Below are positions 5,990 to 25,659 of a stretch of 64,000 nucleotides of DNA, in pieces. Under the pieces are notes generated by a model. It saw only the letters and a list, made by a program, of their open reading frames with translations. It did not search any database and was not told the origin of the DNA. The stretch spans positions 248,001 through 312,000 of IMG/VR virus record IMGVR_UViG_3300043410_001892; one strand, written 5' to 3'. A program made the translations under genes and the position numbers. Within the stretch, counting starts at the first letter, position 1. Every line of letters begins with the position of its first letter.

Positions 5990-5999
5990 TTTATTTTCC

Positions 6000-7895: not shown

Positions 7896-9305
7896 TTAGA
7901 ATGCGTAGCGATCATCCATAATCACTTTAAGCATGATACTTTGTGGTGTAAAGTCATCTAAATCCGCAGATAACACACCTTTTACGATACTTGGACTAAA
8001 GCCACTTACTAACGCAGTACCATTTTGATCATACTTAACAGGTACATTGCTATGTGAATTGATGTTCCAAAATACAACTTGAGGAACATTATATCCTGCT
8101 TCTTCATATTTTCTATGAATCATTTGAATTGCAGAATCATCATGTTCAACACACGAATCAAACTGCATATCAGACAGAATTAGTAAGATTCCTGGCATTT
8201 CTTCTTGTGGAACATTGCCTTTAACTGCAACATCTAAAATCTTAGTAAATGCTGCATGTAAGTTAGTGTTCATAGCCCAGTTTGCTTTAGACATCTGTTG
8301 ATATTTCTCAACTACATTACCTTGCAATGTGATCAAATCAGGTTTAGCAGTAAATGTTAAGAAAGTATCTTTAAACTTACCTTGGTTCTTATCAGCTAAG
8401 TAAATGCCTAGTGATACTGCAACATCTAAACACGTAACTGATTTGCTATTACCTGCTGAACAAGTCATAGATCCTGAAACGTCAACTAGTGGTAAAATAT
8501 TTGCATCACCTACATAGTTAGGTAACGCGTCCCATTGTGCAACAATATGTTGTTTTTCAAGCAATGATGGTGTACCCCAGCCATTTAAACCTTTAACGAT
8601 TTCGTATGGATAAATTGCCCCAGCATTTACTTTTACAGTTGGATCATCACCTTTAACTAATTTTGCAATATATTCAGCATACTTTTCGGTATGGCGAGCA
8701 AATGCTTTTTTATAGCGTGATGAAGCAACACTTGGCACATGACTAAAGTTGATATTGTCCCAATCGTTAGCACACATCTGTGTTTCTACTACTTTAGTAA
8801 GTGCTACTAAAGTTTTACGATAACGTTTTGGTGACCAACCTAAGAAATTACGAAATGCTACAGCGTTGTCACCTTTACGAGGACACCATTTAGCTGCTAG
8901 TCCATTTTGATTTTCAAGTTCTCGTTTTAAGATTGAAAATGCGTGATTGCGAACAGCTTCTGTTTTAAATACAAACAGGTCATCAAATCTTCCCAATTCT
9001 GGTACTTTATTTGCTAACGCCATTGCGCTGTCTGGATCTGAGTTTTCTAAATGTAATAATATGTCTCTAAAGAGTTTACGTTCGCCTGCGCCCCCGCGCA
9101 CATCGCGAGCCCACAAAGCAATTCGTAATGCTAGGTTGCGATCTTCAACTGCAGCTGAAACAAAGCTAGGAATAATATCTTTGCCTCTTGAAGCACCAAT
9201 TTTAAAAAATAAATCAACTAATGGATTAGAAGTTGACTTACGTGCTTTCATACCATTTTCTGTTCTTGCTTCTTGATTTGCTACTGCTTCTACAAATGTT
9301 GTCAT
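7896..9305 (-). CDS. DUF2828-family helical repeat + vWA protein (TROVE/Ro60-like architecture)
   Basis: RTENG, RDVRGGAGER, AAKWCPR, VDVSGSM (MIDAS), LILSDMQFD, VVFWN, LVSGFSP. Confidence 0.85.
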   Translation of the reverse strand: MTTFVEAVANQEARTENGMKARKSTSNPLVDLFFKIGASRGKDIIPSFVSAAVEDRNLALRIALWARDVRGGAGERKLFRDILLHLENSDPDSAMALANKVPELGRFDDLFVFKTEAVRNHAFSILKRELENQNGLAAKWCPRKGDNAVAFRNFLGWSPKRYRKTLVALTKVVETQMCANDWDNINFSHVPSVASSRYKKAFARHTEKYAEYIAKLVKGDDPTVKVNAGAIYPYEIVKGLNGWGTPSLLEKQHIVAQWDALPNYVGDANILPLVDVSGSMTCSAGNSKSVTCLDVAVSLGIYLADKNQGKFKDTFLTFTAKPDLITLQGNVVEKYQQMSKANWAMNTNLHAAFTKILDVAVKGNVPQEEMPGILLILSDMQFDSCVEHDDSAIQMIHRKYEEAGYNVPQVVFWNINSHSNVPVKYDQNGTALVSGFSPSIVKGVLSADLDDFTPQSIMLKVIMDDRYAF

Positions 9306-9844: not shown

Positions 9845-9987
9845 CAGGATAGTTTGGGCTTATTTTGTTTATTATTCTGGTCAAGTAACGCCCCTTGACC
9901 CTATCCTGTACAGGGATTTTGCGTCCTATGTACAAGCTCCATTATGAGCAGCAAATGCTGCGAGCTATGGTTTGCTGAACCTATCCT
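9845..9987 (-). ncRNA. Y-like RNA copy 2 (long, multi-hairpin insert)
   Basis: AGGATAG-GT-TCAGCAAA...CTATCCT-G. Confidence 0.65.
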
Positions 9988-10299: not shown

Positions 10300-10809
10300 T
10301 TATTTACCTAGGTCTTTAAATGATGGAACTTGATATTGCCACCAGTTAGGTAACTTTGATACGCCTTTTGGCATAAATCTTGGAGTTCCATCTAATTCAA
10401 ATGGAATTTCAATTGTTGACTTTAGTCCTATTTTTTCATGAGCTTCTTTTGGGATCATAAAAAAGTAATATGAGTTATTTATTCTTTCATAAACTTGAAC
10501 ACATAACGTTCCAGTTTTATTATGTACATTTGAAATTGGAGCAGTATAGCTTCTTTTATTATTACTAAATCTAACAGTTGATAATTTTGCATCATTGCCA
10601 TTATCTAAGTCATATTGATCTTCAGAAACAACAGTATGTCCACCAACTGCTGCAATTGCGTGTTCAAATGCAGTAGACACTTGTAATATTCCTAAACCAA
10701 GTAAATTGTCAATTGTCCATTGATCCATTTTATCATATCCAGGAATAAGGTGTCTAAAATTATCAAAATGTGCTACATCTAAAACTACGTTTTCTAATTT
10801 TGTTGTCAT
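10300..10809 (-). CDS. hypothetical protein (possibly nuclease-like)
   Basis: 169 aa ORF with upstream sigma70-like promoter; no firm motif. Confidence 0.5.
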   Translation of the reverse strand: MTTKLENVVLDVAHFDNFRHLIPGYDKMDQWTIDNLLGLGILQVSTAFEHAIAAVGGHTVVSEDQYDLDNGNDAKLSTVRFSNNKRSYTAPISNVHNKTGTLCVQVYERINNSYYFFMIPKEAHEKIGLKSTIEIPFELDGTPRFMPKGVSKLPNWWQYQVPSFKDLGK

Positions 10810-10893
10810 AATATTTAATGTGTTTTGTTATGTTTAAAAAAAAGTATATTATAATTTCTTTTTATCTTTTGTCAAGCTTTTTTTTAAAATTAT

Positions 10894-10967
10894 TGGAGCG
10901 GGATACGAGACTCGAACTCGTTTGGATAGCTTGGAAGGCTATTGCACAACCTATATGCCAATCCCGC
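10894..10967 (-). tRNA. tRNA-Gly(TCC)
   Basis: cloverleaf, loop CT-TCC-AA, encoded CCA. Confidence 0.93.
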
Positions 10968-10978
10968 AGATGATATAA

Positions 10979-11034
10979 CTGGATGCATTTTTAGTTTCAC
11001 CAATTGAAATATTAAAAATGGCTGTTAGCATCCA
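10979..11034 (-). ncRNA. Y-like RNA copy 3 (short)
   Basis: TGGATGC-TA-ACAGCC...GCATCCA-G. Confidence 0.7.
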
Positions 11035-11059
11035 AAAATTGTTGTATGCGAACACTAAA

Positions 11060-11112
11060 CTGAATGCATTTACTTTCGCCAATGAAATTAAAAGTTATGC
11101 TGTTAGCATTCA
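11060..11112 (-). ncRNA. Y-like RNA copy 4 (short)
   Basis: TGAATGC-TA-ACAGCA...GCATTCA-G. Confidence 0.7.
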
Positions 11113-11138
11113 AAAACTATAGTATTCGCGTACTATGT

Positions 11139-11215
11139 TGGTCGGGGTAACACGATTTGAACATGCGACCTATCCGCCCCAAACGGATCGCTCTACCAAG
11201 CTGAGCTATACCCCG
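11139..11215 (-). tRNA. tRNA-Pro(TGG)
   Basis: cloverleaf, loop TT-TGG-GG, CCA. Confidence 0.95.
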
Positions 11216-11223
11216 GTAATTCT

Positions 11224-11625
11224 TTATAACAATTTTAAATGACCTGTTACTGGGTCAATCTTCTCAGGATAGTCTGGACCTATTGCTAAACATGTTAGAG
11301 TTGGGACTCCATTAAATTCAGTCAATCCTGCATCTTTAATTAGTTTTGTATTTAATCCATGTTCTAATGCTTCTGAGAAAATATTAAGCAATTCTGCTTC
11401 ACTATTTACATAAACACAGACTTTTTTAAATCTACCTCTAAGCCATTCTTCAACTGGCTTGTTTACAGCTAAATTATAATAAGCATCTTTGTCTGCAGTT
11501 GCAGGATACATTTGCCCATAATTTAAAATTGCACCTAGTGAAGCATGGCTAGTTTGAGCAACGATTTTACCTTTACGCATGTTAAGGTCTTTTCGTACTA
11601 CTATTACTTGTTTAGGTTCTGACAT
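11224..11625 (-). CDS. pth2: peptidyl-tRNA hydrolase, Pth2 type
   Basis: KQVIVVRKDLNMRKGKIVAQTSHA, IKDAGLTE, TCLAIGP, VTGHLKLL. Confidence 0.95.
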   Translation of the reverse strand: MSEPKQVIVVRKDLNMRKGKIVAQTSHASLGAILNYGQMYPATADKDAYYNLAVNKPVEEWLRGRFKKVCVYVNSEAELLNIFSEALEHGLNTKLIKDAGLTEFNGVPTLTCLAIGPDYPEKIDPVTGHLKLL

Positions 11626-12722: not shown

Positions 12723-13015
<293 letters not shown>

Positions 13016-13024
13016 ATAAACTTT

Positions 13025-13681
13025 TTATTTTTGTGAAAGTTGCATTGCAACGAGTCTATCTAAACCAATAGCAACTTCAAACACCATACCGTGTTCCCAG
13101 TCTTTTCTTACAGAACAACCTGCAACTTCCAAATCACCCATCATCCAATCTAATGTTTTTTCGGAATAGTGGGGCAGTTCATCAGCTTCTACAATACGGC
13201 CGCCGTAAGCATTAGTTAATGCTTCTAATGCAGTTTCAATATACGGTGCTTTTGTATCATTACCGCAAAACAACTGGAATTCTAATTGGTAAAACTGTAC
13301 TAAACGTAACTTACTAGCTCGCATTGTTTCAGCGTTGACTTCGTCTCTAAACGATAAACCAACTTGCCACAAGCAAAGCGGAAGTTCTTTAACATTAAAG
13401 TTTGGGTGTAAAATGTTAAATGCTTCAAAAGTACCTGCAGTAGTTTCTGGACGCAAATAACCACGTTTTGTCTCAATTAGTTCAAACCCTACATCAATGT
13501 GCGATTGCAACGTTGCAGCAGGAGTTAGAATTGGTGTTTCTACACGCGCCATTCGTACTGCTCTGTTTAGCTTGTTCCATTCACTGTACAACAAATGCGG
13601 AATTTCTCTAATTAGTGTTTCACGTCGGATAATTTCCTGTTCATTCCACATTACAGTCGCATTTGAAAAACATTTTTGCAT
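13025..13681 (-). CDS. glycyl-tRNA synthetase-like class II catalytic core (truncated, alpha2 type)
   Basis: GYLRPETTAG, QVGLSFRDE, PHYS, EVAIGLDRL; no anticodon-binding domain. Confidence 0.85.
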   Translation of the reverse strand: MQKCFSNATVMWNEQEIIRRETLIREIPHLLYSEWNKLNRAVRMARVETPILTPAATLQSHIDVGFELIETKRGYLRPETTAGTFEAFNILHPNFNVKELPLCLWQVGLSFRDEVNAETMRASKLRLVQFYQLEFQLFCGNDTKAPYIETALEALTNAYGGRIVEADELPHYSEKTLDWMMGDLEVAGCSVRKDWEHGMVFEVAIGLDRLVAMQLSQK

Positions 13682-13766
13682 AGTAGCTCCTACTAGTTAA
13701 TTAAAATAAACATTATACACTAAAATATTAAGATGTCAACTATTACTACATCCTAATAAACTTGTT

Positions 13767-13843
13767 TGGCTGGATAGGCAGGGCTCGAACCTGCGACCCG
13801 CTGATTAACAGTCAACTGCTACTACCAACTGAGCTACTATCCA
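13767..13843 (-). tRNA. tRNA-Asn(GTT)
   Basis: loop CT-GTT-AA, CCA. Confidence 0.95.
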
Positions 13844-13878
13844 ATAAATCTTTTAACTACTTATTTATCTTCGTTATT

Positions 13879-13955
13879 TGGTGGGCCACCCGGGACTTGA
13901 ACCCGGAACCTGCCGATTATGAGTCGGATGCTCTAACCAATTGAGCTAAAGGCCC
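13879..13955 (-). tRNA. tRNA(CAT), Ile2-like
   Basis: GGGCC 5' end, loop CT-CAT-AA, CCA. Confidence 0.88.
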
Positions 13956-13965
13956 TTAATAAATA

Positions 13966-14114
13966 TACCTAAGGATGGATTCGAACCATCACCTCCTCGG
14001 ATTTGCAAGGCAATTCTGTTGCGCCTAACCATATCGCGTTTATGGTATCATTGGCATTACAGGTTGTGGACGTGTATCAATAACGTCTGCTCTAACCAAT
14101 TGAGCTACTTAGGT
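13966..14114 (-). ncRNA. tRNA-like RNA with a ~75 nt multi-hairpin insertion, no encoded CCA
   Basis: acceptor ACCTAAG/CTTAGGT, D arm GCTC-AATTGGTTA-GAGC, T arm GATGG-TTCGAAT-CCATC. Confidence 0.7.
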
Positions 14115-14119
14115 GTAAC

Positions 14120-14194
14120 TGGCGTCGCTACGGGGAATTGAACCCCGGTTGCAAGGATGAAAACCTTGTGTCCTAACCACTAGACGATAGCGAC
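14120..14194 (-). tRNA. tRNA-Glu(TTC)
   Basis: loop TT-TTC-AT, CCA. Confidence 0.95.
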
Positions 14195-14203
14195 AAATTA
14201 TAT

Positions 14204-14297
14204 TAAAACACACTACTACACGGAATCGAACCGTATCACTGACTCCGCGCCAGCTAGTGTTCCACACCCACGTTGATCAAACGCTGTAATGTGTTTA
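14204..14297 (-). ncRNA. degenerate Y-like element with a T-arm
   Basis: AAACACA-TT-ACAGC ... TACGG-TTCGATT-CCGTG ... TGTGTTT; lacks the 3' G. Confidence 0.45.
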
Positions 14298-14313
14298 AAT
14301 ATAACAACTTTAA

Positions 14314-14399
14314 CAGAATAGCTTGCTCAACCATTGAGCTTTATCGCTAAGATAGCAATAATGGAATCGAACCATTAAATAATTTGCTGTGACTATTCT
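14314..14399 (-). ncRNA. Y-like RNA copy 5 with a circularly permuted tRNA body
   Basis: AGAATAG-TC-ACAGCA, T arm, closed acceptor ATTGCTA-TCT-TAGCGAT, D arm, CTATTCT-G. Confidence 0.82.
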
Positions 14400-14407
14400 T
14401 TATTAAA

Positions 14408-14464
14408 CAGGATAGAATTTATTTCAGATTAAGAGTCCAATTTAAATTATGCTGTTACTATCCT
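14408..14464 (-). ncRNA. Y-like RNA copy 6 carrying a Lys(CTT)-like anticodon arm
   Basis: AGGATAG-TA-ACAGCA...TTGGA-CTCTTAA-TCTGA...CTATCCT-G. Confidence 0.72.
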
Positions 14465-14468
14465 AAAC

Positions 14469-14542
14469 TGGCAGTCCCTGCAGGTATCGAACCTACGCTA
14501 GCAGAATCAAAATCTGCTGTGCTACCATTACACCAAGGAACA
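14469..14542 (-). tRNA. tRNA-Gln(TTG)
   Basis: loop TT-TTG-AT, CCA. Confidence 0.93.
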
Positions 14543-14549
14543 CTAATAT

Positions 14550-14635
14550 TGGTGGTTGCTGTTAGATTCGAACTAACGAAGCACTAAGGCGACAGATTTA
14601 CAGTCTGCTGGTTTTAACCACTCACCCAAACAACC
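14550..14635 (-). tRNA. tRNA-Tyr(GTA)
   Basis: loop CT-GTA-AA, variable arm, CCA. Confidence 0.95.
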
Positions 14636-14646
14636 ATGTTCTTTAT

Positions 14647-14880
14647 TTATACAAGTTCTTGATCGTTATGTGCAGTTTCGACTAAGTCTAATACACCTAA
14701 CTTTCTCAAACGTTTTTCTAAAACTTTCAATCTATTTCTAATCTTAGATTTGTCACGTGGACGACCTGTTTTTTCAAGTAACTCTTTAACTTGTGCTAAG
14801 TTTAAAGGTTTAAGTCTTGGGCGACCGTTACGTGTTAGTTTAGGATTAGCTGTTCTGTTTGCTTTACTAATTGTAGACAT
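14647..14880 (-). CDS. basic hypothetical protein
   Basis: 77 aa Arg/Lys-rich ORF. Confidence 0.55.
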   Translation of the reverse strand: MSTISKANRTANPKLTRNGRPRLKPLNLAQVKELLEKTGRPRDKSKIRNRLKVLEKRLRKLGVLDLVETAHNDQELV

Positions 14881-15232
14881 GTTTTTCCTTTACTTTATTA
14901 ATCATAGTGGTTAGCTGTTCATTAGTAAAATGATCAGGAACATTTATATGAAAAATGTTTCTGCCATCTTGTTTTTCAACTTGAACAATATCCTTAGTTT
15001 CTTCTACATCAATGTTTTCTACAAGTTCAATTGAAGTTGTATTTGACATTATAACTAAGTTTGCAGGTTCTACATGTTTAGCAAACGTAGTCTTAATATT
15101 TTCCATATATTCCATAGCATGTCTTGCTGGCATATTACCTACATCAACTTTAACTATTAGAATACTGTTTTCAGTTAGTTTTTGCTTATCTAAAATCTGT
15201 ATTGAATTTTCACTTAATTCTATTGTTTGCAT
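14867..15232 (-). CDS. hypothetical protein
   Basis: 121 aa ORF after a sigma70-like promoter. Confidence 0.55.
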   Translation of the reverse strand: MQTIELSENSIQILDKQKLTENSILIVKVDVGNMPARHAMEYMENIKTTFAKHVEPANLVIMSNTTSIELVENIDVEETKDIVQVEKQDGRNIFHINVPDHFTNEQLTTMINKVKEKHVYN

Positions 15233-15578
15233 ATTTGCCTTTGTTATTTAGTATGTGTATATTATACACGTTTAAAACTAGTTGTCAAGTAAATAATTTT
15301 TGTATTCTTGTTTAATTAAATCTTCAATAGCAGCACTTACATCAATACCATTTGGATTATTCATATCTTCTTTTGCTTCTTGAGTGACATTTGTTTCAAA
15401 AAACTTATCACGCCATTCTGCATAATCTAACTTATTTGCCATGTTTCTTAAAATCCTTAACTAAATGTTTAAGAATGTCGTGCTCAAGATTGATATGTGC
15501 AGTAATATTTTTAGTAGGTTCAAATGTCCATTTACCGTTTAACTTACGAGGTTTTTTTGGTAATTTAGTTTTCATTCT

Positions 15579-15761
15579 TTATCCTTTGTTTTTAAATTCT
15601 GCTGCAACATCGTCAATTGTTGCGTGATTGCCATGTGAATTAGAAATAAATTCTTCTTTTGGTTCTTCTTTTTCTTTTTTATTAAATATCTTATCCCAGT
15701 TTTCATCAAACTGTGATTTGCTAATGCCTAATGGGCGCATTCTACTACCTTTGCCTGCCAT
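15579..15761 (-). CDS. small hypothetical protein
   Basis: MAGKGSRMRP start, GGAGA RBS. Confidence 0.55.
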   Translation of the reverse strand: MAGKGSRMRPLGISKSQFDENWDKIFNKKEKEEPKEEFISNSHGNHATIDDVAAEFKNKG

Positions 15762-15783
15762 AAAATCTCCTTAACGTATAGAT

Positions 15784-15984
15784 TTAACCCCATGTTAAAC
15801 CTACAAGCATTGAATGTTTAGGATCTTTAAACTGCATCCTAACCTCTCCTTGAAAACAATGCCATTTGTAATCTTGATTATGTATCCAACCTTTTTCTCT
15901 ACACCATTTTGATATTTCTAATCCTTTAGCAAAATTACCTGGTATTGTTACATATCCATTTTCGTGTGCGTAATCTGTATTCAT
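15784..15984 (-). CDS. small hypothetical protein (F..L.W family)
   Basis: C-terminal FKDPKHSMLVGLTWG. Confidence 0.5.
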   Translation of the reverse strand: MNTDYAHENGYVTIPGNFAKGLEISKWCREKGWIHNQDYKWHCFQGEVRMQFKDPKHSMLVGLTWG

Positions 15985-16006
15985 ATTTTTATTTGTAAGG
16001 TTGTTG

Positions 16007-16070
16007 CAGGATGGGATTGAGCTTTTTTAGATCCAAATTCTAACGCTTAATTGTTTGCAGTTACCATCCT
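16007..16070 (-). ncRNA. Y-like RNA copy 7 (short, 7-nt-loop hairpin)
   Basis: AGGATGG-TA-ACTGCA...TTAGA-ATTTGGA-TCTAA...CCATCCT-G. Confidence 0.7.
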
Positions 16071-16083
16071 AAAACTTGTTTAT

Positions 16084-16210
16084 CAGAATGCATTTTAATT
16101 TTCCAGCGCGTCTACTACTTTCGCCATATGCGTTATTCAACGCATAGTAGGATTTGCACCTACACGTTATAAAACACTGGATTCCATTAAAAGTATGCAG
16201 TTAGCATTCT
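16084..16210 (-). ncRNA. Y-like RNA copy 8 with a permuted Leu-type tRNA body
   Basis: AGAATGC-TA-ACTGCA; TCCAG; T arm GTAGG-TGCAAAT-CCTAC; closed acceptor; D arm TGGCGAAAGTAGTAGACGCG; CTGGA; GCATTCT-G. Confidence 0.82.
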
Positions 16211-16214
16211 ATTT

Positions 16215-16290
16215 TGGTTGCGAAGGGTTGGAATCGAACCAACGTCCTCTGGGTTATGAGCCCAGCTATCTACCACTGATATACCTCGCA
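16215..16290 (-). tRNA. tRNA-fMet(CAT)
   Basis: CTGGG-CTCATAA-CCCAG (three G-C pairs), CCA. Confidence 0.9.
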
Positions 16291-16300
16291 TAATGTAAAA

Positions 16301-16419
16301 CAGGATCCGTTTAATATCGCGCTCTAACCGTTAAGCTAACTGCTATATACATAGCAGTGTAGGATTCGAACCTACATCACGTGCTCCAAATGCAAATTAT
16401 TGTATGCTGTTTAGATCCT
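16301..16419 (-). ncRNA. Y-like RNA copy 9 with a permuted tRNA body
   Basis: AGGATCT-AA-ACAGCA; T arm GTAGG-TTCGAAT-CCTAC; ACTGCTAT-GTAT-ATAGCAGT; D arm; GGATCCT-G. Confidence 0.85.
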
Positions 16420-16433
16420 AAAACTTTTAAAAC

Positions 16434-16671
16434 TTATTAAAAAGAACCCAGTAAAGTTTTGGTTTCATCGAGTTGCTGCGGTCAACGTTTTACAGACGCC
16501 CTTTACTAGTTCCGCCTACATGACTACTATAGTAACTAGAATCGAAGTACTGTAAATACCCGAAACTCTCACTCGTTACCAGTTCGAGTCTATAACTCCC
16601 AAAATGTTATTTTTCCATATAACATTATGACCTTTCGGAACTGTTTTCAGTAGTTAGGTTCTTTTTAATAA
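16434..16671 (-). ncRNA. unknown structured RNA closed by a 15-bp terminal helix
   Basis: TTATTAAAAAGAACC...GGTTCTTTTTAATAA with internal GNRA-capped hairpins; no ORF. Confidence 0.55.
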
Positions 16672-16680
16672 ATTCTTTAA

Positions 16681-16752
16681 CAGGTTCCACAAAGTGGGCA
16701 AATGTACGGAACATCTTTTCCGTAAGTCTGCAATAATTGCTGTAGGAAACCT
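16681..16752 (-). ncRNA. Y-like RNA copy 10 (short)
   Basis: AGGTTTC-CT-ACAGCA...TACGGAA/TTCCGTA hairpin...GGAACCT-G. Confidence 0.72.
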
Positions 16753-16764
16753 AAAACTATTTAA

Positions 16765-16817
16765 CAGAATGTATTTAGTCATATTTCAAAATGAATTAAA
16801 GTTGCTGCAAACATTCT
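16765..16817 (-). ncRNA. Y-like RNA copy 11 (short)
   Basis: AGAATGT-TT-GCAGCA...ACATTCT-G. Confidence 0.68.
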
Positions 16818-16887
16818 ATAAACATATTGTACTACATTTTTACTACTGTGTCAAGCATTTTTTAATTTTTTTACAAGGAGTTTTTAA

Positions 16888-17001
16888 CAGGTTTCACAGT
16901 CTTTAGTCAATTACTCTACCAGCTGAGCTAACTGCTCTTGCGAGCAGTGCAGGATTCGAACCTGCGACACGTTGATTGAAATTGTTTGCTGTAGGAAACC
17001 T
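16888..17001 (-). ncRNA. Y-like RNA copy 12 with a permuted tRNA body (acceptor closed by GCAA tetraloop)
   Basis: AGGTTTC-CT-ACAGCA; GCAGG-TTCGAAT-CCTGC; ACTGCTC-GCAA-GAGCAGT; TAGCTCAGCTGGTAGAGT; GAAACCT-G. Confidence 0.88.
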
Positions 17002-17012
17002 AAAACTTGATC

Positions 17013-17318
17013 CTAATCCTTTAGGATAGCTAATACTTCATCTTCACGCATAATGATGACTTCTTCGTCATGTAATTTGATAGGTGCCCCAGCATTCTTA
17101 CCAAATACAATTCTATCACCAATTTTTACTTTTATTTCTCGAAACTGTCCACCATCCATGTACTTCCCTGTTCCGATTGCTAGTACTGTCCCTAGTACTG
17201 ATTTTTCTGTAGCTACAGGTGCAATTAAAATACCACCCGCACTAACCTTTTCTTCTTCATCTTGTCTTACAACGATCCGATCGTGTAACGGAATAACATT
17301 ATCTTTTGTTACTGCCAT
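17013..17318 (-). CDS. groES: co-chaperonin GroES
   Basis: PLHDRIVVR, SAGGILI, GTVLAIGTG, IIMREDEVLAIL. Confidence 0.96.
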   Translation of the reverse strand: MAVTKDNVIPLHDRIVVRQDEEEKVSAGGILIAPVATEKSVLGTVLAIGTGKYMDGGQFREIKVKIGDRIVFGKNAGAPIKLHDEEVIIMREDEVLAILKD

Positions 17319-17338
17319 GTTGTGTACCTTTGTTGTTA

Positions 17339-17380
17339 AGTATGTGTATATTATACACTAATAAAACAGTTTGTCAAGTA
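17339..17380 (-). promoter_or_regulatory. sigma70-type promoter, 42-bp near-exact duplicate of 26054-26095
   Basis: TTGACA-16 bp-TATAAT; one mismatch versus the second copy. Confidence 0.75.
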
Positions 17381-17448
17381 TTTTTTTACAATTTATATGT
17401 AACTAAATATCCCAATAAAAATATTACTGCTACTGATACAAAAAACAT

Positions 17449-17910
17449 CTAACCTCCTAGGAATATTTCTCTCATTTCGTTTATGTTGCGTGTAGTTAGA
17501 CCAATGGCGCCATCTACATGTACAAAGCGTGATTTTTGATAATCAAGCATATCTGATGTATCATCAAGGATTACATAATTATAATCTTCATTATGTTCTT
17601 GCAACCATTTTTCTATTTCGTAACCACGATCCCAACCTTTTTTTGAAAAATCAGGATCACTTTGTCTAGTCTGTGGAGTTACACCAATAATACGTGTTCT
17701 ACAACAAAATCCTGCACGATACAATATCTCTTTCATTTCTTGCAAGCTATGTAGAATACGCCAAGAAGAACTTATTACGATTTCACAATCAACTTCTTCA
17801 CAAAATACTCTAAGCATTACAAGTTTATTGTTTATTAAATGAATGCCTTCAGCCAGACTGGCGTCGTTGTTAAGGACGCCATCGATATCTAAGAATAGTA
17901 ATCGTTTCAT
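17449..17910 (-). CDS. HAD-domain protein (Swiss Army Knife RNA-repair-like HAD)
   Basis: LFLDIDGVLN, IVISSSWR, RGYEIEKWL, YVILDD. Confidence 0.9.
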   Translation of the reverse strand: MKRLLFLDIDGVLNNDASLAEGIHLINNKLVMLRVFCEEVDCEIVISSSWRILHSLQEMKEILYRAGFCCRTRIIGVTPQTRQSDPDFSKKGWDRGYEIEKWLQEHNEDYNYVILDDTSDMLDYQKSRFVHVDGAIGLTTRNINEMREIFLGG

Positions 17911-18538: not shown

Positions 18539-19639
18539 TTAGATTTCCTCCTGTGTTAAGAACCAGTTACGTGCTACATATTTAACTCGAGACATAACAT
18601 CTTTAATGTCAAGCTCGCTTGCAACTAAAGTATCAGTTTCTTCTTTAACAACATCATCAGAGATCCATTTTAAGAAAACCGGAATGCTTTTAGGTTCGAT
18701 ACTAATATTGTTACATTTCAAATATTCTAAACCTTGATTAAGTCTAGATTCAGTTACAACAGTTTCAGCAAACTCGTTAATAGAATTAACTTTTTCAATA
18801 TCAACACTTGCTAGTGTTTTAACTTTAGATGAACTGTGTTTTTCACCTTTAACTTTAAACATAAAGCGTGAGCTGTTATATCCAGGAGTAACACATTGCC
18901 AAACAATACCTTCACCTACACCTGTTACGCCAAATTGTTTAGCAATTGGACAATTTTGTTCTACTTCAACAGTAAGTTCACCGAGTTTGTTTTGTGCAAG
19001 CTCAGGCTGATTGAAATCAATTTCCATTGTGTATGTTTTAAAATCATACTTAGTAAATAAGTTGTCAGGGAAATCTAACCCGCGGAAGCCAACAATTTCT
19101 TTAGCGTATTCTACTGTTCGTTTAACTTGTTCAGCAGTAAAGTAAATACGAGTTTGTTCGCTTGTTGCTGGATCAACATGTGCGTCCCATGCAACAATAC
19201 CAAAGATGATAAACATTTTAGGTACTTCACTAATACCTACACCTTTTTGTACGCCTTGTCCGCACCATTCACCAAAGATAGAATAATGTGTCAATGTACC
19301 TTCGTGAAAAGTGTTTGAAGCAGCTACTAATAAACTTTCAAATGCAGCGCGGTGTTTTACTGTGTAAGCAGCCCAACCAAAGTTGTCATTTACAACAGTT
19401 AAAATACGTTCGCGTGATTGAGCCCAAAAATCATGTAATTTAGTTGATTCGCAAGTAACACTAGCATTAGTGCCATGTGCCTTAACAGAACCTTCAAACG
19501 TTAAAGTTGGCATAGGTGCAAAGCGATCAATAATTGGATTGCCATCTGCATCTAATCCTTTAAAGCTTGAACGACTTTTAACTTCCTTAACCACTTGTCT
19601 AAATTGATTGATACTTGGCCATGACATGTGTTTTTGCAT
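18539..19639 (-). CDS. RNA ligase, Rnl2-like family
   Basis: SVKAHGTNAS (KxxGxN), FGEWCG, GEGIVW, FKVKGEKH. Confidence 0.85.
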   Translation of the reverse strand: MQKHMSWPSINQFRQVVKEVKSRSSFKGLDADGNPIIDRFAPMPTLTFEGSVKAHGTNASVTCESTKLHDFWAQSRERILTVVNDNFGWAAYTVKHRAAFESLLVAASNTFHEGTLTHYSIFGEWCGQGVQKGVGISEVPKMFIIFGIVAWDAHVDPATSEQTRIYFTAEQVKRTVEYAKEIVGFRGLDFPDNLFTKYDFKTYTMEIDFNQPELAQNKLGELTVEVEQNCPIAKQFGVTGVGEGIVWQCVTPGYNSSRFMFKVKGEKHSSSKVKTLASVDIEKVNSINEFAETVVTESRLNQGLEYLKCNNISIEPKSIPVFLKWISDDVVKEETDTLVASELDIKDVMSRVKYVARNWFLTQEEI

Positions 19640-21247: not shown

Positions 21248-21570
21248 CGTGGAAATACAGGTTCGTTACAAAAAGCATCACAACTTTCTAATCCTGCAGG
21301 TGGATCAGGAAGTTCATATAGTGATTTTAATGGAGGTGGAGGATTAAATCCAGTCATTCCGTTTTGATTGCGATATTGCGGTTTGTGTGGTGGAAGAGGA
21401 GGGGACATCGTCTTAAACGGATGCCCGTCAACAATACGTTTCATAGCATCACGGTGTTCCATCAATGCTATGCGTGTTTCACCGTGATCTATATACATTA
21501 TTTCATATCTCAACTTTTCTAATGTTGAATTGATATAATCGTATGATTCTTGTGTTAAGTTTTGATTCAT
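21214..21570 (-). CDS. hypothetical protein
   Basis: 118 aa Pro-rich ORF within the operon. Confidence 0.5.
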   Translation of the reverse strand: MNQNLTQESYDYINSTLEKLRYEIMYIDHGETRIALMEHRDAMKRIVDGHPFKTMSPPLPPHKPQYRNQNGMTGFNPPPPLKSLYELPDPPAGLESCDAFCNEPVFPRWMYTLIGRLK

Positions 21571-22877
21571 AGTCCACCTAATGCGCGTAATCGAATAGTA
21601 TCTAAACTATCATCAATCAACAGCTTACCATTGTGATAATATGTTTCTAATTGGTATTCTTCAAATCTACCACCTTGTGATTTTTTACCTGGATCAGTAA
21701 CTGGATTTTTAACAGTATCAATCCATTCATCATTGATTTTCATTGCAGAAGTTTTCTGTGCAAATGAATAAGTATCACGATTCACTTTTTGTAATAAACC
21801 ACCACCACTGCCATATACAAGTGTTTCAGCTGCATAGCCAAGTTCTTTAACCATGTGTGCTAATGCTTTCATAGATGCAGTATCAATACCATCACCTTGA
21901 ATTAAACTAACATTGTTAAGCACTTTGTAGCCTTTAGAGTTTACAGTATGTCCAAACCAGTAATCAATAACATTAAGTAATTTTGGTATTACTACTAATG
22001 GATTACCTGAGTCTGGTCGGATAACAACTTTAATACCACTTTGTTTAATAATGTGTACAAAGTGTGAACACAATGCTTCAGTATCGCGATAAATGTCATA
22101 ACCATCAAGTACAATTGAAACTATATCACCTTTTGCCATATCGTGTAGAATAGATGAAATATATTCCATTTGTTTATCATTGCCATAAGAGCATTGAACG
22201 CTGTGTTCAGTAGCAGGAATTGAGTAACCTGGCATTTTACAATTATAATACTTACGGCTAGCAGCAATTGATGCTAAGTTGTCAGTACCTCTAAAGTAAA
22301 TTAAGTGAGCTAATCCACCCATCTCTGCAGTCTCATATGAGCTTACACCGCGAGCGCCAAAGTCATGTAATGCAAATTGTAAGTTTGCTAGGTTATCAGA
22401 AGTTTCATCGTACACTTCTTTAAGTATTGCATAGTTCTCACGATCATTTGAAGCAATAGTACTTGGATACCAAACATCACGTTGCAACCATGATTCAATG
22501 TAAGATGGCAACCAGTACAACTCTGGATCGTTTGATTCAACTGTAAGAATTGGAGTTTGTGATGGAGTAGGTGTGCCTTCTAGCACTGCTTTAATAGTAA
22601 CAGGCAAGTAACCACCGTGTACATCATGAATTCTCTCCCATCCTGCGTAATTAAATGGTAATCCATGTTCAGTAAGAATCTGTTCTGCTTCAATAACATC
22701 TTCCCATTTAATTGGTTTTAGCAGATTCTTTTTAATTGCCATCTGCAAGCCAAATGGTACGATTGTTTTACCTGGCTTTCTTGCTGACAAGTAAGCAAAT
22801 TGAGCAGAAGTACCAGCTGGGTACCATGCATAGTGACTGGCTTTGTAAGAGTCGGCATTAAGAATAATATTAGACAT
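21567..22877 (-). CDS. nadV: nicotinamide phosphoribosyltransferase
   Basis: ADSYKASH, LHDFGARG, PATEHS, IRPDSG, IQGDG, GSGGGLLQKVNRDT. Confidence 0.95.
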   Translation of the reverse strand: MSNIILNADSYKASHYAWYPAGTSAQFAYLSARKPGKTIVPFGLQMAIKKNLLKPIKWEDVIEAEQILTEHGLPFNYAGWERIHDVHGGYLPVTIKAVLEGTPTPSQTPILTVESNDPELYWLPSYIESWLQRDVWYPSTIASNDRENYAILKEVYDETSDNLANLQFALHDFGARGVSSYETAEMGGLAHLIYFRGTDNLASIAASRKYYNCKMPGYSIPATEHSVQCSYGNDKQMEYISSILHDMAKGDIVSIVLDGYDIYRDTEALCSHFVHIIKQSGIKVVIRPDSGNPLVVIPKLLNVIDYWFGHTVNSKGYKVLNNVSLIQGDGIDTASMKALAHMVKELGYAAETLVYGSGGGLLQKVNRDTYSFAQKTSAMKINDEWIDTVKNPVTDPGKKSQGGRFEEYQLETYYHNGKLLIDDSLDTIRLRALGGL

Positions 22878-22887
22878 TGTTACCTCG

Positions 22888-25616: not shown

Positions 25617-25659
25617 AAATCCTCCTAACGTATGTTATGAAAAAGCACCCCGGAGGGTG

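What the first reader, a model, noticed from the sequence alone, without database searches (positions are those of the whole stretch)
14408..16817. Short Y-like copies appear to display isolated anticodon-like stem-loops
Seen: copy 6 carries TTGGA-CTCTTAA-TCTGA, a near-perfect Lys(CUU) anticodon arm. Copy 7 has TTAGA-ATTTGGA-TCTAA (7-nt loop, central TTG), the same ATTTGGA loop recurs in copy 9, and copy 11 has a TT-TGA-AA Ser-like loop. Inference: the common stem is a modular handle carrying either tRNA elbows or anticodon loops. These could bait host anticodon nucleases (PrrC/PARIS/VapC-type), which cleave specific tRNAs.
Basis: inference. Interest (0 to 1): 0.6.

Follow-up and report, generated by a model that had tools for sequence, protein, structure and literature searches.

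The report
Phage Y-like RNAs displaying anticodon loops
A 372-kb freshwater phage scatters small RNAs through its tRNA cluster that share one conserved stem, probably bound by the phage's own Ro60-like protein, and some of them carry a copy of a tRNA anticodon stem-loop (most often lysine's) at the tip, which may be a bait for tRNA-cutting host defences.

Summary
The window lies in a complete 372-kb freshwater phage. All features discussed are on the minus strand.

**Observation: partly confirmed.**
- At least 12 elements at 9.8-17.0 kb share a covarying 7-bp closing stem plus an invariant ACAGCA motif.
- They lie upstream of a gene whose model folds like Ro60 (7896-9305).
- Cargo is modular. 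The long copies carry a YrlA-like T arm, capped acceptor stem and D arm. The short copies carry a single hairpin.
- Copy 6 (14409-14464) carries a real anticodon-arm look-alike, TTGGA-CTCTTAA-TCTGA.

- Of 95 distinct short copies, 36 have 7-nt loops (7.4 expected) and 24 read CU-NNN-AA (0.12 expected).
- These loops match the real tRNA loops of the same phages letter for letter, with Lys most frequent.
- The arm covaries, and one scaffold carries different triplets.

**The other copies are weaker.**
- Copy 7 has the architecture, but its loop ATTTGGA matches no tRNA loop and it has no ortholog.
- Copy 9's loop is the variable arm of a full-length copy.
- Copy 11 has an 8-nt loop and is not anticodon-like.

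**Interpretation.** The modular handle is supported. The bait idea is plausible, given neighbouring RNA-repair genes and the lysine bias, but untested. I rate this a new variant of Y RNA. The same handle occurs in phage Felix O1.

The parts
7896..9305 (-). Ro60-like protein gene (469 aa; Pfam DUF2828 + DUF7788), the presumed partner of the handle
   Evidence: Pfam hits E 1e-25 and 7e-49. The AF2 model (pLDDT 72.6) matches Ro60/TROVE structures over the full length: 9kop and 9l5y (Thermus phage phiLo Ro60), 1yvr and 2nvo, with E 6e-9 to 2e-6 and TM about 0.5.
9846..9987 (-). Y-like element with a 142-nt non-tRNA cargo (handle AGGATAG/CTATCCT)
   Evidence: Handle search. Orthologs with the same handle and different interiors occur in L003, L004 and L005.
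10980..11034 (-). Short Y-like element with a 5-nt loop hairpin (TTTCA-ATTGG-TGAAA); not anticodon-like
   Evidence: R1 hit of 47 bits.
11061..11112 (-). Short Y-like element; not anticodon-like
   Evidence: R1 hit of 37 bits.
14315..14399 (-). Copy 5: compact full-type element with T arm, capped acceptor stem and D arm
   Evidence: Rfam YrlA hit of 26.9 bits, below threshold.
14409..14464 (-). Copy 6: short element displaying a Lys(CUU)-type anticodon arm on an extension helix
   Evidence: R1 hit of 65.8 bits. The MFE fold shows handle, outer stem and 5-bp/7-nt hairpin. Orthologs show compensatory changes.
14424..14440 (-). The anticodon-arm look-alike TTGGA-CTCTTAA-TCTGA inside copy 6
   Evidence: CTCTTAA is the loop of 11 of 13 tRNA-Lys(CTT) genes in relatives.
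16008..16070 (-). Copy 7: short element of the same architecture, tip loop ATTTGGA (arm at 16027-16043)
   Evidence: R1 hit of 63.5 bits.. The loop matches no tRNA loop. No ortholog in L004 or L005.
16085..16210 (-). Copy 8: long element with a T-arm-like hairpin (GTAGG-TGCAAAT-CCTAC) and further helices
16302..16419 (-). Copy 9: full-type element. Its variable-arm hairpin TGC-ATTTGGA-GCA lies at 16382-16394, followed by T arm, capped acceptor stem and D arm
   Evidence: Rfam YrlA core hit of 25.8 bits.
16682..16752 (-). Copy 10: 71-nt element with a GC-rich hairpin (ACGGAA-AAGATG-TTCCGT); not anticodon-like
   Evidence: R1 hit of 29.4 bits. Ortholog at L004 2354-2428.
16766..16817 (-). Copy 11: short element with an 8-nt-loop hairpin at 16779-16794; not anticodon-like
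   Evidence: R1 hit of 41.9 bits.
16826..16854 (-). Sigma-70-like promoter (TTGACA-17-TACAAT, 11 of 12) ending about 9 nt before copy 11
   Evidence: No minus-strand terminator-like site was found in 13600-17450.
16889..17001 (-). First full-type element: handle with bulge, T arm, GCAA-capped acceptor stem and D arm
   Evidence: Rfam YrlA hit of 36.3 bits, E 3e-6, covering the core only..
18539..19639 (-). RNA ligase gene (context: RNA repair)
   Evidence: Pfam RNA_ligase, E 1.6e-9. Related context: HAD_SAK_2 at 17449-17910 and Pth2 at 11224-11625; AAA_33 kinase at 5528-6085 and Metallophos at 3550-4335.

Best explanation
**What the elements are.** They are small non-coding RNAs of a Y-RNA-like family. 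They are transcribed with the phage's tRNA genes from strong sigma-70-type promoters.

**Anatomy.**
- Each RNA closes on itself through a 7-bp stem that begins AGG and ends CCU-G.
- The stem is followed on the 5' side by two unpaired bases and the invariant ACAGCA.
- This 'handle' is most likely the docking site of the phage's Ro60-fold protein (7896-9305), by analogy with Ro60 and Y RNAs.

**Cargo above the handle is exchangeable.**
- Long copies carry a tRNA elbow (T arm, capped acceptor stem, D arm), like bacterial YrlA.
- One class of short copies, including copy 6, is a rod. It carries an extension helix, a small internal loop and a 5-bp stem.
- That stem is capped by a 7-nt loop reading C-U-NNN-A-A, identical to the anticodon loop of a real tRNA. 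Lys is commonest; Ser, Cys, Thr, Asn, Tyr, Arg and Ile also occur.

**Proposed action (inferred, not shown).** The tip presents an anticodon arm to proteins that read anticodon loops. The most plausible readers are host anticodon nucleases that cut tRNA-Lys and others. The Ro-like particle would then titrate, tether or report on them, while the neighbouring ligase, kinase, phosphatase, Pth2 and tmRNA genes repair the damage.
For: **Shown here:**
- The handle family is real and strand-specific. My stem search found 377 elements on the gene strand and 47 on the other in 1.07 Mb.
- All 179 hits of covariance model R1 are on the gene strand.
- The stem covaries: 95% of cells paired against 80% in shuffles and 27-44% when partners are slid. 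Nine pairs show double changes.
- The anticodon-type helix covaries too. At one pair the types are UA 7, AU 6, CG 5, GU 2 and UG 1.
- Among 95 distinct short copies, 36 have 7-nt loops (7.4 expected), 27 have U33 plus R37 (1.2 expected) and 24 read CU...AA (0.12 expected).
- The loops equal real tRNA loops of the same phage group: CTTTTAA 19/19 Lys, CTCTTAA 11/13, CTGTTAA 31/31 Asn, CTGTAAA 14/14 Tyr, CTTGAAA 29/29 Ser.
- The stems are not those of the cognate tRNAs. One scaffold stem (TTTGA/TCAAA or TTAGA/TCTAA) carries different triplets.
- Lys loops are in excess: 10 of 41, and 24 of 66 loop-bearing copies in the independent sample. Only 32 of 905 tRNA genes are Lys.

**Link to the Ro-like gene:**
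- The protein model has a Ro60 fold.
- In many relatives an element ends about 10 nt before the gene start.
- Of 80 loci found by the handle alone, 30 hold the gene within the fetched stretch. All 38 handles there are on the gene's strand and 37 lie upstream.
- Of 5 further whole records, 3 hold the gene elsewhere.
- The same ACAGCA handle sits beside the homologous gene in Felix O1, Cronobacter phage S13 and Synechococcus phage BUCT-ZZ01.

**Context:**
- RNA ligase, HAD_SAK_2, Pth2, a kinase, a phosphoesterase and a tmRNA gene lie nearby.
- A Ro60-like protein of the Felix O1-like phage Bas63 counters the Ppl defence (PMC11482910).
- The Ro60 of Thermus phage phiLo binds phage Y-like RNAs and host PNPase (PMC12135203).
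- PARIS cuts tRNA-Lys (PMC11455837).
Against: - No expression data exist for the short copies. RNA-labelled runs held contigs only for a neighbouring 255-nt RNA and for tRNA-like pieces.
- Binding of the Ro-like protein to the handle is inferred from location, co-occurrence and analogy only.
- The handle lacks the GNCGAA motif of Rsr-bound YrlA.
- The host is unknown, so no anticodon nuclease could be examined.
- The arms are AU-rich and weak. The whole copy 6 folds at -8.4 kcal/mol.
- From general knowledge, several anticodon nucleases need modified bases that a mini-substrate may not acquire.
- About half of the short copies, copy 11 among them, carry other hairpins with 5-, 8- or 9-nt loops. 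Anticodon display is therefore one cargo among several.
- Felix O1's short copies are not anticodon-like.
- One 97%-complete record with a handle match has no Ro-like gene.
Confidence: 0.5

Rival explanations
1. The displayed arm engages tRNA-modifying enzymes or aminoacyl-tRNA synthetase anticodon-binding domains rather than nucleases. The Y-like RNA would titrate or recruit the enzymes that make t6A37 or i6A37, or others that read positions 34-38. This would change host tRNA modification or bring such enzymes to the Ro-like particle.
For: - Nearly all loops have A37-A38 preceded by U36 or A36 (39 of 41), against 56% of tRNA genes (counts).
- From general knowledge, these are the sequence contexts of t6A37 and i6A37.
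- YrlA is itself modified by tRNA enzymes (PMC4201824).
- A class II synthetase-like fragment sits in the cluster at 13025-13681.
Against: - The U36/A36 bias may simply follow from the AT-rich genome (35% GC) and from descent from a Lys-type founder.
- No modification gene is linked to the array.
- Met(CAT), the commonest tRNA gene and also a U36-A37 tRNA, is almost absent among the displays.
Confidence: 0.15
2. The short copies are sensors or sacrificial substrates. A host anticodon nuclease cuts the displayed loop, and the cut RNA, with its 2',3'-cyclic phosphate end, or the freed Ro-like protein, switches on or guides the phage RNA-repair enzymes.
For: - The same anatomy as in the main explanation applies.
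- Neighbouring ligase, kinase, phosphoesterase and HAD_SAK_2 genes are present.
- In Salmonella, damaged tRNA ends activate the rsr-yrlBA-rtcBA repair operon (PMC7790460, abstract).
Against: - No regulator with a ligand-sensing domain was seen next to the array.
- This differs from the main explanation only in what happens after recognition, which sequence cannot tell.
Confidence: 0.12
3. The elements are processing punctuation or regulatory hairpins of the tRNA operons. They might be RNase entry sites, or sites for autoregulation of the Ro-like mRNA. On this view the anticodon-like tips are leftovers of tRNA-derived ancestry with no present role.
For: - The elements sit within 40 nt of tRNA genes on both sides (67 of 108 before, 57 after).
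- AU-rich flanks GUUUU and GUUAA recur.
- In many relatives one element abuts the start of the Ro-like gene.
- About half of the short copies have non-anticodon hairpins.
Against: - Leftovers should decay. Instead the loop frame C-U-NNN-A-A is kept and the arm covaries, while linkers vary in sequence and length across the same alignment.
- The triplet is swapped on an otherwise near-identical scaffold. L047 4002 and L027 2619 differ at 4 of 61 positions, one of which turns UUU into UGU.
- Only 4 of 124 adjacent tRNAs share the triplet, so these are not local partial duplicates.
Confidence: 0.13
4. Pieces of a tRNA in trans. An anticodon-type copy and an elbow-type copy are brought together by a dimer of the Ro-like protein to form a complete tRNA look-alike. 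In phages with the permuted CCA-ended form it might even be a working two-piece adaptor.
For: - The two cargo classes are complementary halves of the L shape.
- In the window and in L004, copy 6 is followed 9 nt later by the elbow-type copy 5.
- phiLo Ro60 forms dimers on a Y-like RNA (PMC12135203).
- S13 and BUCT-ZZ01 have tRNA-likes with an open acceptor stem plus CCA, and the handle hairpin in place of the anticodon arm.
Against: - Adjacency is the exception. Only 4 of 108 anticodon-type copies are followed by an elbow-type copy within 40 nt.
- There is no evidence for aminoacylation.
- The geometry is untested.
Confidence: 0.05
5. The anticodon-like hairpins are chance hairpins in AT-rich spacer DNA.
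For: - In the window alone the evidence is thin. Two of six short copies qualify, and shuffles reach that in 1.6% of trials.
- Copy 7's loop matches no tRNA.
Against: - In relatives there are 24 CU...AA loops against 0.12 expected.
- The arm covaries.
- The loops match tRNA loops letter for letter.
- An independent sample confirms the pattern.
Confidence: 0.03

Closest known systems
YrlA / bacterial Y RNAs bound by Rsr (Ro60), Rfam RF02553 (PMC4201824)
   Same: - Both are small RNAs whose 5' and 3' ends pair into a stem.
- Both are encoded near and on the same strand as a Ro60-type protein gene.
- The long copies carry the same T arm, capped acceptor stem and D arm module. The Rfam model aligns to that core at 36.3 bits.
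   Different: - All hits are far below the gathering score of 69.
- The handle is different: AGG...ACAGCA, with no GNCGAA motif.
- The protein is of the DUF2828/DUF7788 type, and no Pfam TROVE match exists in the genome.
- The short copies that are the subject of this finding have no tRNA elbow at all. They display an anticodon arm, a cargo not mentioned in the passages of the YrlA paper I read.
- There are 12 or more copies per phage rather than one or two.
Deinococcus radiodurans Yrn1
   Same: According to PMC4201824, Yrn1 can be drawn with a potential 'anticodon arm' of 5 bp between tRNA-like arms.
   Different: - That loop has 6 nt and no anticodon-loop signature. It is part of a larger tRNA-like fold.
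- Here the arm is isolated on a rod, has 7 nt, and equals real anticodon loops.
Thermus phage phiLo Ro60 with Yrl1/Yrl2 (PMC12135203; PDB 9kop, 9l5y)
   Same: - It is a phage-encoded Ro60-fold protein with phage-encoded Y-like RNAs upstream of its gene.
- It is the best structural match of the window's protein.
- It is proposed to hijack host PNPase against defences.
   Different: - phiLo has two RNAs with a CGAA bulge and no tRNA-part cargo reported.
- Sequence identity of the proteins is about 16%.
Ro60-like gp130 of Felix O1-like phage Bas63 (PMC11482910)
   Same: - The protein family is probably the same, though Bas63 itself was not compared. Felix O1's ortholog is 39% identical over 97% of the query.
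- In both, the gene abuts a tRNA cluster.
- The authors guessed that some 'tRNAs' might be Y RNAs, and showed that gp130 counters the Ppl defence.
   Different: - The RNAs were not identified there.
- Here the handle is defined and found in Felix O1's tRNA spacers (L204 7719-7785, 7886-7943, 8340-8407, 8427-8551).
- Felix O1's short copies are not anticodon-like.
Phage tRNAs that escape anticodon nucleases (T5 tRNA-Lys versus PARIS; anticodon-loop variants)
   Same: Both are encoded in phage tRNA clusters. Both concern the anticodon arm of tRNA-Lys and others as the battleground (PMC11455837).
   Different: - Those are complete, functional tRNAs with changed arms that avoid cutting.
- These are arm-only displays with canonical loops on a protein-binding handle. 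They have no acceptor end and cannot decode.
Armless mitochondrial tRNAs of nematodes (from general knowledge)
   Same: Both have a similar size (about 45-60 nt) and plan: a 7-bp closing stem, two connectors and an anticodon arm.
   Different: - The closing stem and ACAGCA motif are shared with non-tRNA cargoes.
- No CCA is encoded; the stem is followed by G and U-rich sequence.
- An extension helix makes the RNA a rod rather than an L.
- Charging was not tested.

Membership tests
YrlA (Rfam RF02553) | Scores at or above the family's gathering threshold (69 bits) | tested here: not met
   The best hit is 36.3 bits (16888-16982). Others score 26.9, 25.8 and 19. The short copies 6, 7 and 11 give no hit at all.
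YrlA (Rfam RF02553) | tRNA-like domain: T arm, acceptor-like stem-loop and D arm | tested here: not met
   The feature is met by the long copies (16889-17001, 16302-16419, 14315-14399). It is absent from the short copies that are the subject of the finding.
YrlA (Rfam RF02553) | 5' GNCGAA(N)G motif in the terminal stem, the presumed Rsr contact | tested here: not met
   The handle reads AGGNNNN-NN-ACAGCA. The Rfam alignment leaves the YrlA stem positions unmatched.
Y RNA in the broad sense (partner RNA of a Ro60-type protein) | Terminal stem formed by the 5' and 3' ends, with conserved letters beside an internal loop or bulge | tested here: met
   There is a covarying 7-bp stem with fixed AGG/CCU, a 2-nt bulge and ACAGCA.
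Y RNA in the broad sense (partner RNA of a Ro60-type protein) | Encoded near a Ro60-type gene on the same strand | tested here: met
   - The elements lie 0.5-7.7 kb upstream of the Ro60-fold gene.
- In handle-sampled loci, 38 of 38 handles are on the gene's strand and 37 of 38 lie upstream.
- The pairing recurs in Felix O1, S13 and BUCT-ZZ01.
Y RNA in the broad sense (partner RNA of a Ro60-type protein) | Physically bound by the Ro60-type protein | not testable with these tools
   This needs pull-down or gel shift. No RNA-protein complex prediction was available.
tRNA anticodon stem-loop (structural look-alike, not a gene family) | 5-bp stem, 7-nt loop, U33 and purine 37 | tested here: met
   - Copy 6 and copy 7 both meet it.
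- In relatives, 27 of 95 short copies meet it against 1.2 expected.
- The helix covaries.
tRNA anticodon stem-loop (structural look-alike, not a gene family) | Loop letters equal to those of a real tRNA of the same anticodon | tested here: met
   - Met for copy 6: CTCTTAA equals the loop of 11 of 13 tRNA-Lys(CTT) genes.
- Met for the class as a whole.
- Not met for copy 7: ATTTGGA is on no tRNA.
Functional tRNA gene | Cloverleaf with D and T arms and an acceptor end that can be charged | tested here: not met
   ARAGORN and Rfam tRNA do not call the short copies. They have no D or T arm and no CCA.
RNA decoy or inhibitor of anticodon nucleases (no established family) | Binds, is cut by, or inhibits an anticodon nuclease | not testable with these tools
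   Only indirect support exists: the Lys excess and the RNA-repair neighbourhood. Two full-text searches and one 2026 review turned up no described example.

The most novel reading that the evidence does not exclude
Phages with a DUF2828-type Ro60 protein run an RNA-based counter-defence. A single protein ring is loaded, through one universal handle, with a library of interchangeable tRNA parts. The anticodon-arm members, dominated by Lys, act as specific baits that capture or neutralise host anticodon nucleases. By simply swapping the triplet, the phage can retarget the bait.
Probability: 0.3. Interest if true: 0.85.

Novelty: new variant of a known kind. Interest (0 to 1): 0.7.

Why it matters
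- **A new cargo for Y RNAs.** Y RNAs are known to mimic the tRNA elbow, but what that mimicry is for remains open. Here the same handle carries either the elbow or, separately, the anticodon arm. That points to the tRNA-reading proteins of the host as the targets.
- **A definable protein-RNA pairing across many phages.** The handle (7-bp stem plus ACAGCA) is shared with the Ro60-like proteins found in 711 phage records.
- **Those phages include laboratory models.** Felix O1 and Bas63-type coliphages carry it, as does the cultured cyanophage BUCT-ZZ01, which also has an anticodon-type copy.
- **The biology becomes testable.** A guess already in the literature, that some 'tRNAs' next to gp130 are Y RNAs, can now be checked directly.
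- **A possible new class of counter-defence.** If the baits work, they would be an RNA-based answer to tRNA-cutting immunity (PrrC, RloC, PARIS and others).
- **Annotation consequences.** Over-long 'tRNA-Ser' and 'tRNA-OTHER' annotations in phage genomes would be explained.

Tried and rejected
- **Near-identical DNA search in named phages:** no match.
- **GroES neighbour as a probe:** it returned only the same phage (L001, 100% identical), so it was useless for comparison.
- **Pfam TROVE search of the whole phage:** no hit. The protein is Ro60-like only by fold. A sequence search of PDB also found nothing.
- **RNAalifold on the short-copy alignment:** it predicted only the handle, because the inner stems are AU-rich. 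I therefore specified the structure by hand and tested it by pair counts.
- **Arms copied from the cognate or neighbouring tRNA:** rejected. Stems differ at 2-8 of 10 positions from cognate tRNAs, and only 4 of 124 adjacent tRNAs share the triplet.
- **The display replaces a missing tRNA gene:** not supported. The cognate gene is present in 59 fetched stretches and absent in 44.
- **Anticodon-type and elbow-type copies come in fixed pairs:** rejected. Only 4 of 108 are adjacent.
- **Expression:** the one read-laying run (3,401 letters, within the operators' limit) gave no contigs over copies 6, 7 or 11 in RNA-labelled runs. This says nothing either way for 50-60-nt RNAs.
- **Burroughs and Aravind 2016 (PMC5062991):** the paper is not held. 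What I recall of it is not used as evidence.

Full report
**Setting**

The window is bases 248001-312000 of a complete 372,173-bp virus record with terminal repeats and 35% G+C. It comes from freshwater metagenomes. Everything in the region of interest is on the minus strand.

ARAGORN and Rfam find 11 tRNA genes between 10.9 and 16.3 kb, and a permuted tmRNA gene at 25620-26041. Consensus sigma-70-type promoters lie at 17377-17350, 15288-15261 and 13739-13712 (12 of 12 matches) and at 16854-16826 (11 of 12). No minus-strand terminator-like site occurs in 13.6-17.45 kb. The region therefore reads as a set of long tRNA operons.

**The repeat family**

Reading the minus strand, the spacers hold elements with a fixed plan:
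- They begin (G)UUUU-AGGNNNN-NN-ACAGCA.
- They end with the complement of the seven letters, followed by G and U-rich sequence.

A search for this plan gives 12 elements in the window:

|---|---|---|
| 16889-17001 | 113 | first copy |
| 16766-16817 | 52 | copy 11 |
| 16682-16752 | 71 | copy 10 |
| 16302-16419 | 118 | copy 9 |
| 16085-16210 | 126 | copy 8 |
| 16008-16070 | 63 | copy 7 |
| 14409-14464 | 56 | copy 6 |
| 14315-14399 | 85 | copy 5 |
| 11061-11112 | 52 | - |
| 10980-11034 | 55 | - |
| 9846-9987 | 142 | - |

The twelfth is counted from the handle-like match at 11021-11040 seen, which overlaps the 10980-11034 element; the table lists the eleven delimited by the stem search. Elsewhere in the 372-kb genome the motif does not recur in this form.

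The seven stem pairs differ between copies and always stay complementary: AGGATAG/CTATCCT, AGGATGG/CCATCCT, AGGTTTC/GAAACCT, AGAATGT/ACATTCT and so on. That is the signature of an RNA helix.

**The partner protein**

The ORF at 7896-9305, downstream of the array on the same strand, matches Pfam DUF2828 and DUF7788. It has no sequence match in PDB, and the genome has no Pfam TROVE match.

An AlphaFold2 model built on 23 homologs (pLDDT 72.6) aligns over its whole length with several structures at E 6e-9 to 2e-6 and TM about 0.5:
- the Ro60 of Thermus phage phiLo (9kop, 9l5y)
- Xenopus Ro60 (1yvr)
- Deinococcus Rsr (2nvo)

After these come von Willebrand A domains. The protein is thus a Ro60-fold ring with a vWA domain.

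Its neighbours are RNA-repair and translation-rescue genes:
- RNA ligase (18539-19639)
- HAD_SAK_2 (17449-17910)
- Pth2 (11224-11625)
- a P-loop kinase (5528-6085)
- a calcineurin-type phosphoesterase (3550-4335)

**Long copies**

Rfam's YrlA model hits the long copies below threshold: 36.3, 26.9 and 25.8 bits against a gathering score of 69. The alignment covers only the T arm, the capped acceptor-like stem and the D arm, not the terminal stem. The long copies therefore work like YrlA but carry a different handle. YrlA's GNCGAA motif (PMC4201824) is absent.

**Relatives**

The Ro-like protein retrieved 80 loci from IMG/VR at 65-80% identity. L001 and L002 are the same phage.
- In 1.07 Mb of these loci, my stem-based search finds 377 elements on the gene strand and 47 on the opposite strand.
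- Lengths are bimodal, at 45-65 nt and 85-125 nt.
- Synteny with the closest relatives (L004, L005) identifies orthologs of copies 5, 6, 8, 9, 10 and 11, of the first copy, and of the two short copies between tRNA-Pro and tRNA-Gly.
- Copy 7 and the ORF block 14647-15984 are specific to this phage.

Among 95 distinct short elements of the relatives, I scored the best interior hairpin.

| Feature | Observed | Expected from shuffled interiors |
|---|---|---|
| 7-nt loop | 36 | 7.4 |
| U at loop position 2 and a purine at position 6 | 27 | 1.2 |
| Loop reads CU-NNN-AA | 24 | 0.12 |
| 9-nt loop (a second class) | 31 | 6.8 |

An alignment of 21 anticodon-type copies (A2) shows the architecture:
- the handle
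- unpaired ACAGCAA
- an extension helix of about 3-7 pairs
- a small internal loop
- a 5-bp stem
- the 7-nt loop

Pair counts on this hand-specified structure give:
- 95% of cells paired, against 80% in shuffles and 27-44% when partners are slid
- 9 pairs with changes on both sides
- within the anticodon-type helix, pair types UA 7, AU 6, CG 5, GU 2 and UG 1 at one pair, and GC 13, AU 5, CG 2 and UG 1 at the next

A covariance model built from A2 (R1) finds 179 matches in 1.15 Mb, all on the gene strand. The window's hits are:
- copy 6: 65.8 bits
- copy 7: 63.5 bits
- the 10980-11034 element: 47 bits
- copy 11: 41.9 bits
- the 11061-11112 element: 37 bits
- copy 10: 29.4 bits

**Are the loops really anticodon loops?**

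The 905 tRNA genes that ARAGORN calls in the same loci all lie on the gene strand. They carry exactly these 7-mers:

| Loop | tRNA identity | tRNA genes with this loop |
|---|---|---|
| CTTTTAA | Lys(TTT) | 19 of 19 |
| CTCTTAA | Lys(CTT) | 11 of 13 |
| CTGTTAA | Asn | 31 of 31 |
| CTGTAAA | Tyr | 14 of 14 |
| CTTGAAA | Ser(TGA) | 29 of 29 |
| CTTCTAA | Arg(TCT) | 19 of 23 |
| CTCAAAA | Leu(CAA) | 15 of 19 |

The stems tell a different story:
- They are not those of the cognate tRNAs, differing at 2-8 of 10 positions.
- The same scaffold stem (TTTGA/TCAAA or TTAGA/TCTAA) carries different triplets: TTT, GCT, TCT, GAT and TGT.
- Two 61-nt copies, L047 4002 and L027 2619, differ at four positions, one of which turns UUU into UGU.

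The displayed identities are also skewed:
- Lys is in excess, at 10 of 41 canonical loops against 32 of 905 tRNA genes.
- Position 36 is U or A in 39 of 41 loops, against 56% of tRNA genes.
- Met, the commonest tRNA gene, is nearly absent among the displays.

A second sample was drawn from IMG/VR with the handle alone (at least 120 stretches). It gave 108 short elements, of which 66 had such loops:
- CTTTTAA: 22
- CTTCTAA: 6
- CTTGAAA: 4
- CTGTAAA: 4
- CTCTTAA: 2
- others: 28

Across all loci there are 108 distinct anticodon-type elements:
- They sit within 40 nt of a tRNA gene on the 5' side in 67 cases and on the 3' side in 57.
- Only 4 are followed by an elbow-type copy.
- Only 4 of 124 adjacent tRNAs share the triplet.
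- The cognate tRNA gene is present in 59 fetched stretches and absent in 44.

- **Copy 6** is a typical member of the anticodon class. Its arm is at 14424-14440 and its loop CTCTTAA is the Lys(CUU) loop. Compensatory changes appear in L004 and L005. ARAGORN finds no tRNA-Lys gene in this phage.
- **Copy 7** has the full architecture and a perfect 5-bp stem (16027-16043). Its loop ATTTGGA (U33, G37) is on no tRNA gene of the group, and the copy has no ortholog. It is anticodon-like in shape only.
- **Copy 9** carries the same 7-mer on a 3-bp stem at the variable-arm position of a full-length element (16382-16394). Orthologs read ATTTGAA and ATTCGGC.
- **Copy 11** belongs to another short class. 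Its conserved hairpin TCAT/ATGA has an 8-nt loop (16779-16794). Wider relatives, mostly placed directly before the Ro-like gene, have 8-9-nt loops.

**Link between the handle and the Ro-like gene**

- In many relatives an element ends about 10 nt before the start of the Ro-like gene, for example L057 9927-9990 with the gene at 10001.
- Of 80 loci fetched by the handle pattern alone, 30 contain the gene within the 1-14 kb held.
- In those loci all 38 handles are on the gene's strand and 37 lie upstream.
- Of five larger records without the gene in the fetched stretch, three have it elsewhere. One 97%-complete record lacks it.

The protein family has 711 matching records among named phages. They include Felix O1 (39% identity), mycobacteriophages annotated 'Ro-like', and Campylobacter, Listeria, Staphylococcus and Vibrio phages.

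The ACAGCA handle turns up beside the homologous gene in three named phages:
- **Felix O1.** In the spacers of the tRNA cluster just downstream of the gene I find AGACCNN-NN-ACAGCAA...NNGGTCT-G four times. Three copies are short and not anticodon-like. One is a full elbow-type copy (L204 8427-8551).
- **Cronobacter phage S13 and Synechococcus phage BUCT-ZZ01.** The handle appears in circularly permuted form. An otherwise normal tRNA-like gene, with an open acceptor stem and encoded CCA, has the handle hairpin in place of its anticodon arm. In S13 these genes are annotated as 113-121-nt 'tRNA-Ser' or 'tRNA-OTHER'.
- **BUCT-ZZ01** also has short copies with loops CTTTTAC and TCGTAAA.

**Mechanism**

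Shown here:
- a conserved, strand-specific, covarying RNA family in tRNA operons
- a Ro60-fold gene tied to it by position and co-occurrence
- an anticodon-arm cargo class that equals real anticodon loops

Inferred:
- that the Ro-like protein binds the handle, by analogy with Ro60 and Y RNAs
- that the displayed arm is read by proteins that recognise anticodon loops

I favour host anticodon nucleases as those readers, for five reasons:
- Lys dominates the displays, and tRNA-Lys is the target of PARIS AriB (PMC11455837). From general knowledge it is also the target of PrrC.
- The loops are canonical, as a bait should be.
- The island is otherwise devoted to tRNA supply and RNA repair.
- A Ro60-like protein of a Felix O1-type phage has been shown to counter a defence system (PMC11482910).
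- phiLo Ro60 with its Y-like RNAs recruits host PNPase (PMC12135203).

The rivals differ mainly in who reads the arm or in what follows recognition. They are recruitment of modification enzymes, sensing for repair, operon punctuation with vestigial tips, and two-piece tRNA look-alikes. Sequence alone cannot decide between them.

I put about 0.85 on the structural description, about 0.6 on Ro-like binding of the handle, and about 0.3 on the nuclease-bait function. The figure of 0.5 for the combined statement reflects this mix.

**Novelty**

- Rfam 15 has no family for the handle or the short copies.
- Full-text searches found YrlA, phiLo and Bas63, but no description of anticodon-arm Y RNAs or RNA decoys of anticodon nucleases.
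- A 2026 review of tRNA modifications in viral replication mentions none.
- The library lacks most subscription journals, so a prior description cannot be excluded.

I classify the finding as a new variant of a known kind: Y RNAs that mimic tRNA.

**Limits**

- The host is unknown.
- No expression data cover the short copies.
- Counts of 'distinct' elements include orthologs, so they are not independent events.
- The shuffle controls ignore relatedness.
- Typed motifs in this report are short strings taken from tool outputs.

Noticed in passing
window 16425-16681 (minus strand), inside the finding's span: A conserved, highly structured RNA of about 255 nt lies between copy 10 and copy 9, closed by a long stem (AAAAAGAACC / GGGTTCTTTTT). 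It is conserved in the closest relatives, with 7 pairs showing compensatory changes in 4 sequences. It has no Rfam match. Contigs 100% identical to 16447-16642 and 16514-16664 occur in two metatranscriptome-labelled runs, while flanking DNA is not covered.
   Followed up: partly
L082 about 10870-11140 (Cronobacter phage S13); L083 about 10590-10860 (Synechococcus phage BUCT-ZZ01): These are circularly permuted versions of the long elements. They are tRNA-like genes with a normal open acceptor stem and encoded CCA, in which the anticodon arm is replaced by the handle hairpin (for example GCATTCT-GTAA-AGAATGA-AT-TCTGCAA). In S13 they are annotated as 121- and 113-nt 'tRNA-Ser' and 'tRNA-OTHER'.
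   Followed up: partly
L204 7719-7785, 7886-7943, 8340-8407, 8427-8551 (Salmonella phage Felix O1): The same ACAGCAA handle (AGACCNN...NNGGTCT-G) occurs four times in the unannotated spacers of Felix O1's tRNA cluster, just downstream of its Ro-like gene. One of the four is a full elbow-type copy.
   Followed up: partly
window 13956-14119 (minus strand): A tRNA-like gene missed by ARAGORN. It has an acceptor stem, a D arm, an arm with a 9-nt loop (TATTGATAC), an insert of about 75 nt and a T arm. One contig of run X23 joins 14116 back to 13962 ('goes back 155'), meaning a circular or tandem form of exactly this unit.
   Followed up: no
window 12968-13016 (minus strand): Match to the bacterial large-subunit rRNA model, positions 1093-1148, at 29.8 bits and E 5e-6. 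It lies in a 420-nt non-coding stretch after tRNA-Thr and may be an rRNA-fragment look-alike.
   Followed up: no
window 14195-14290 (minus strand): Another tRNA-like piece with a clear T arm (ACGGTTCGATTCCGT) and a long closing stem. Neither ARAGORN nor Rfam tRNA calls it.
   Followed up: no
window 1659-2429 (minus strand): The phage encodes an AmoC/PmoC-family protein (Pfam AmoC, E 2e-121). This points to an ammonia- or methane-oxidising host.
   Followed up: no
window 21567-23829 and 29150-31228 (minus strand): NAD salvage genes are present (NAPRTase/NAMPT; NUDIX with cytidylyltransferase-like domain), together with a CHASE2-nucleotide cyclase protein.
   Followed up: no
window 25620-26041 (minus strand): A phage-encoded permuted (two-piece type) tmRNA gene with tag peptide AKASKFEYMTVDFSLEAADMVA.
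   Followed up: no
relatives, for example L057 9927-9990, L029 9926-9991, L049 9928-9991: A short Y-like element with an 8-9-nt loop ends about 10 nt before the start codon of the Ro-like gene in many relatives. This suggests processing from, or autoregulation of, that mRNA.
   Followed up: no
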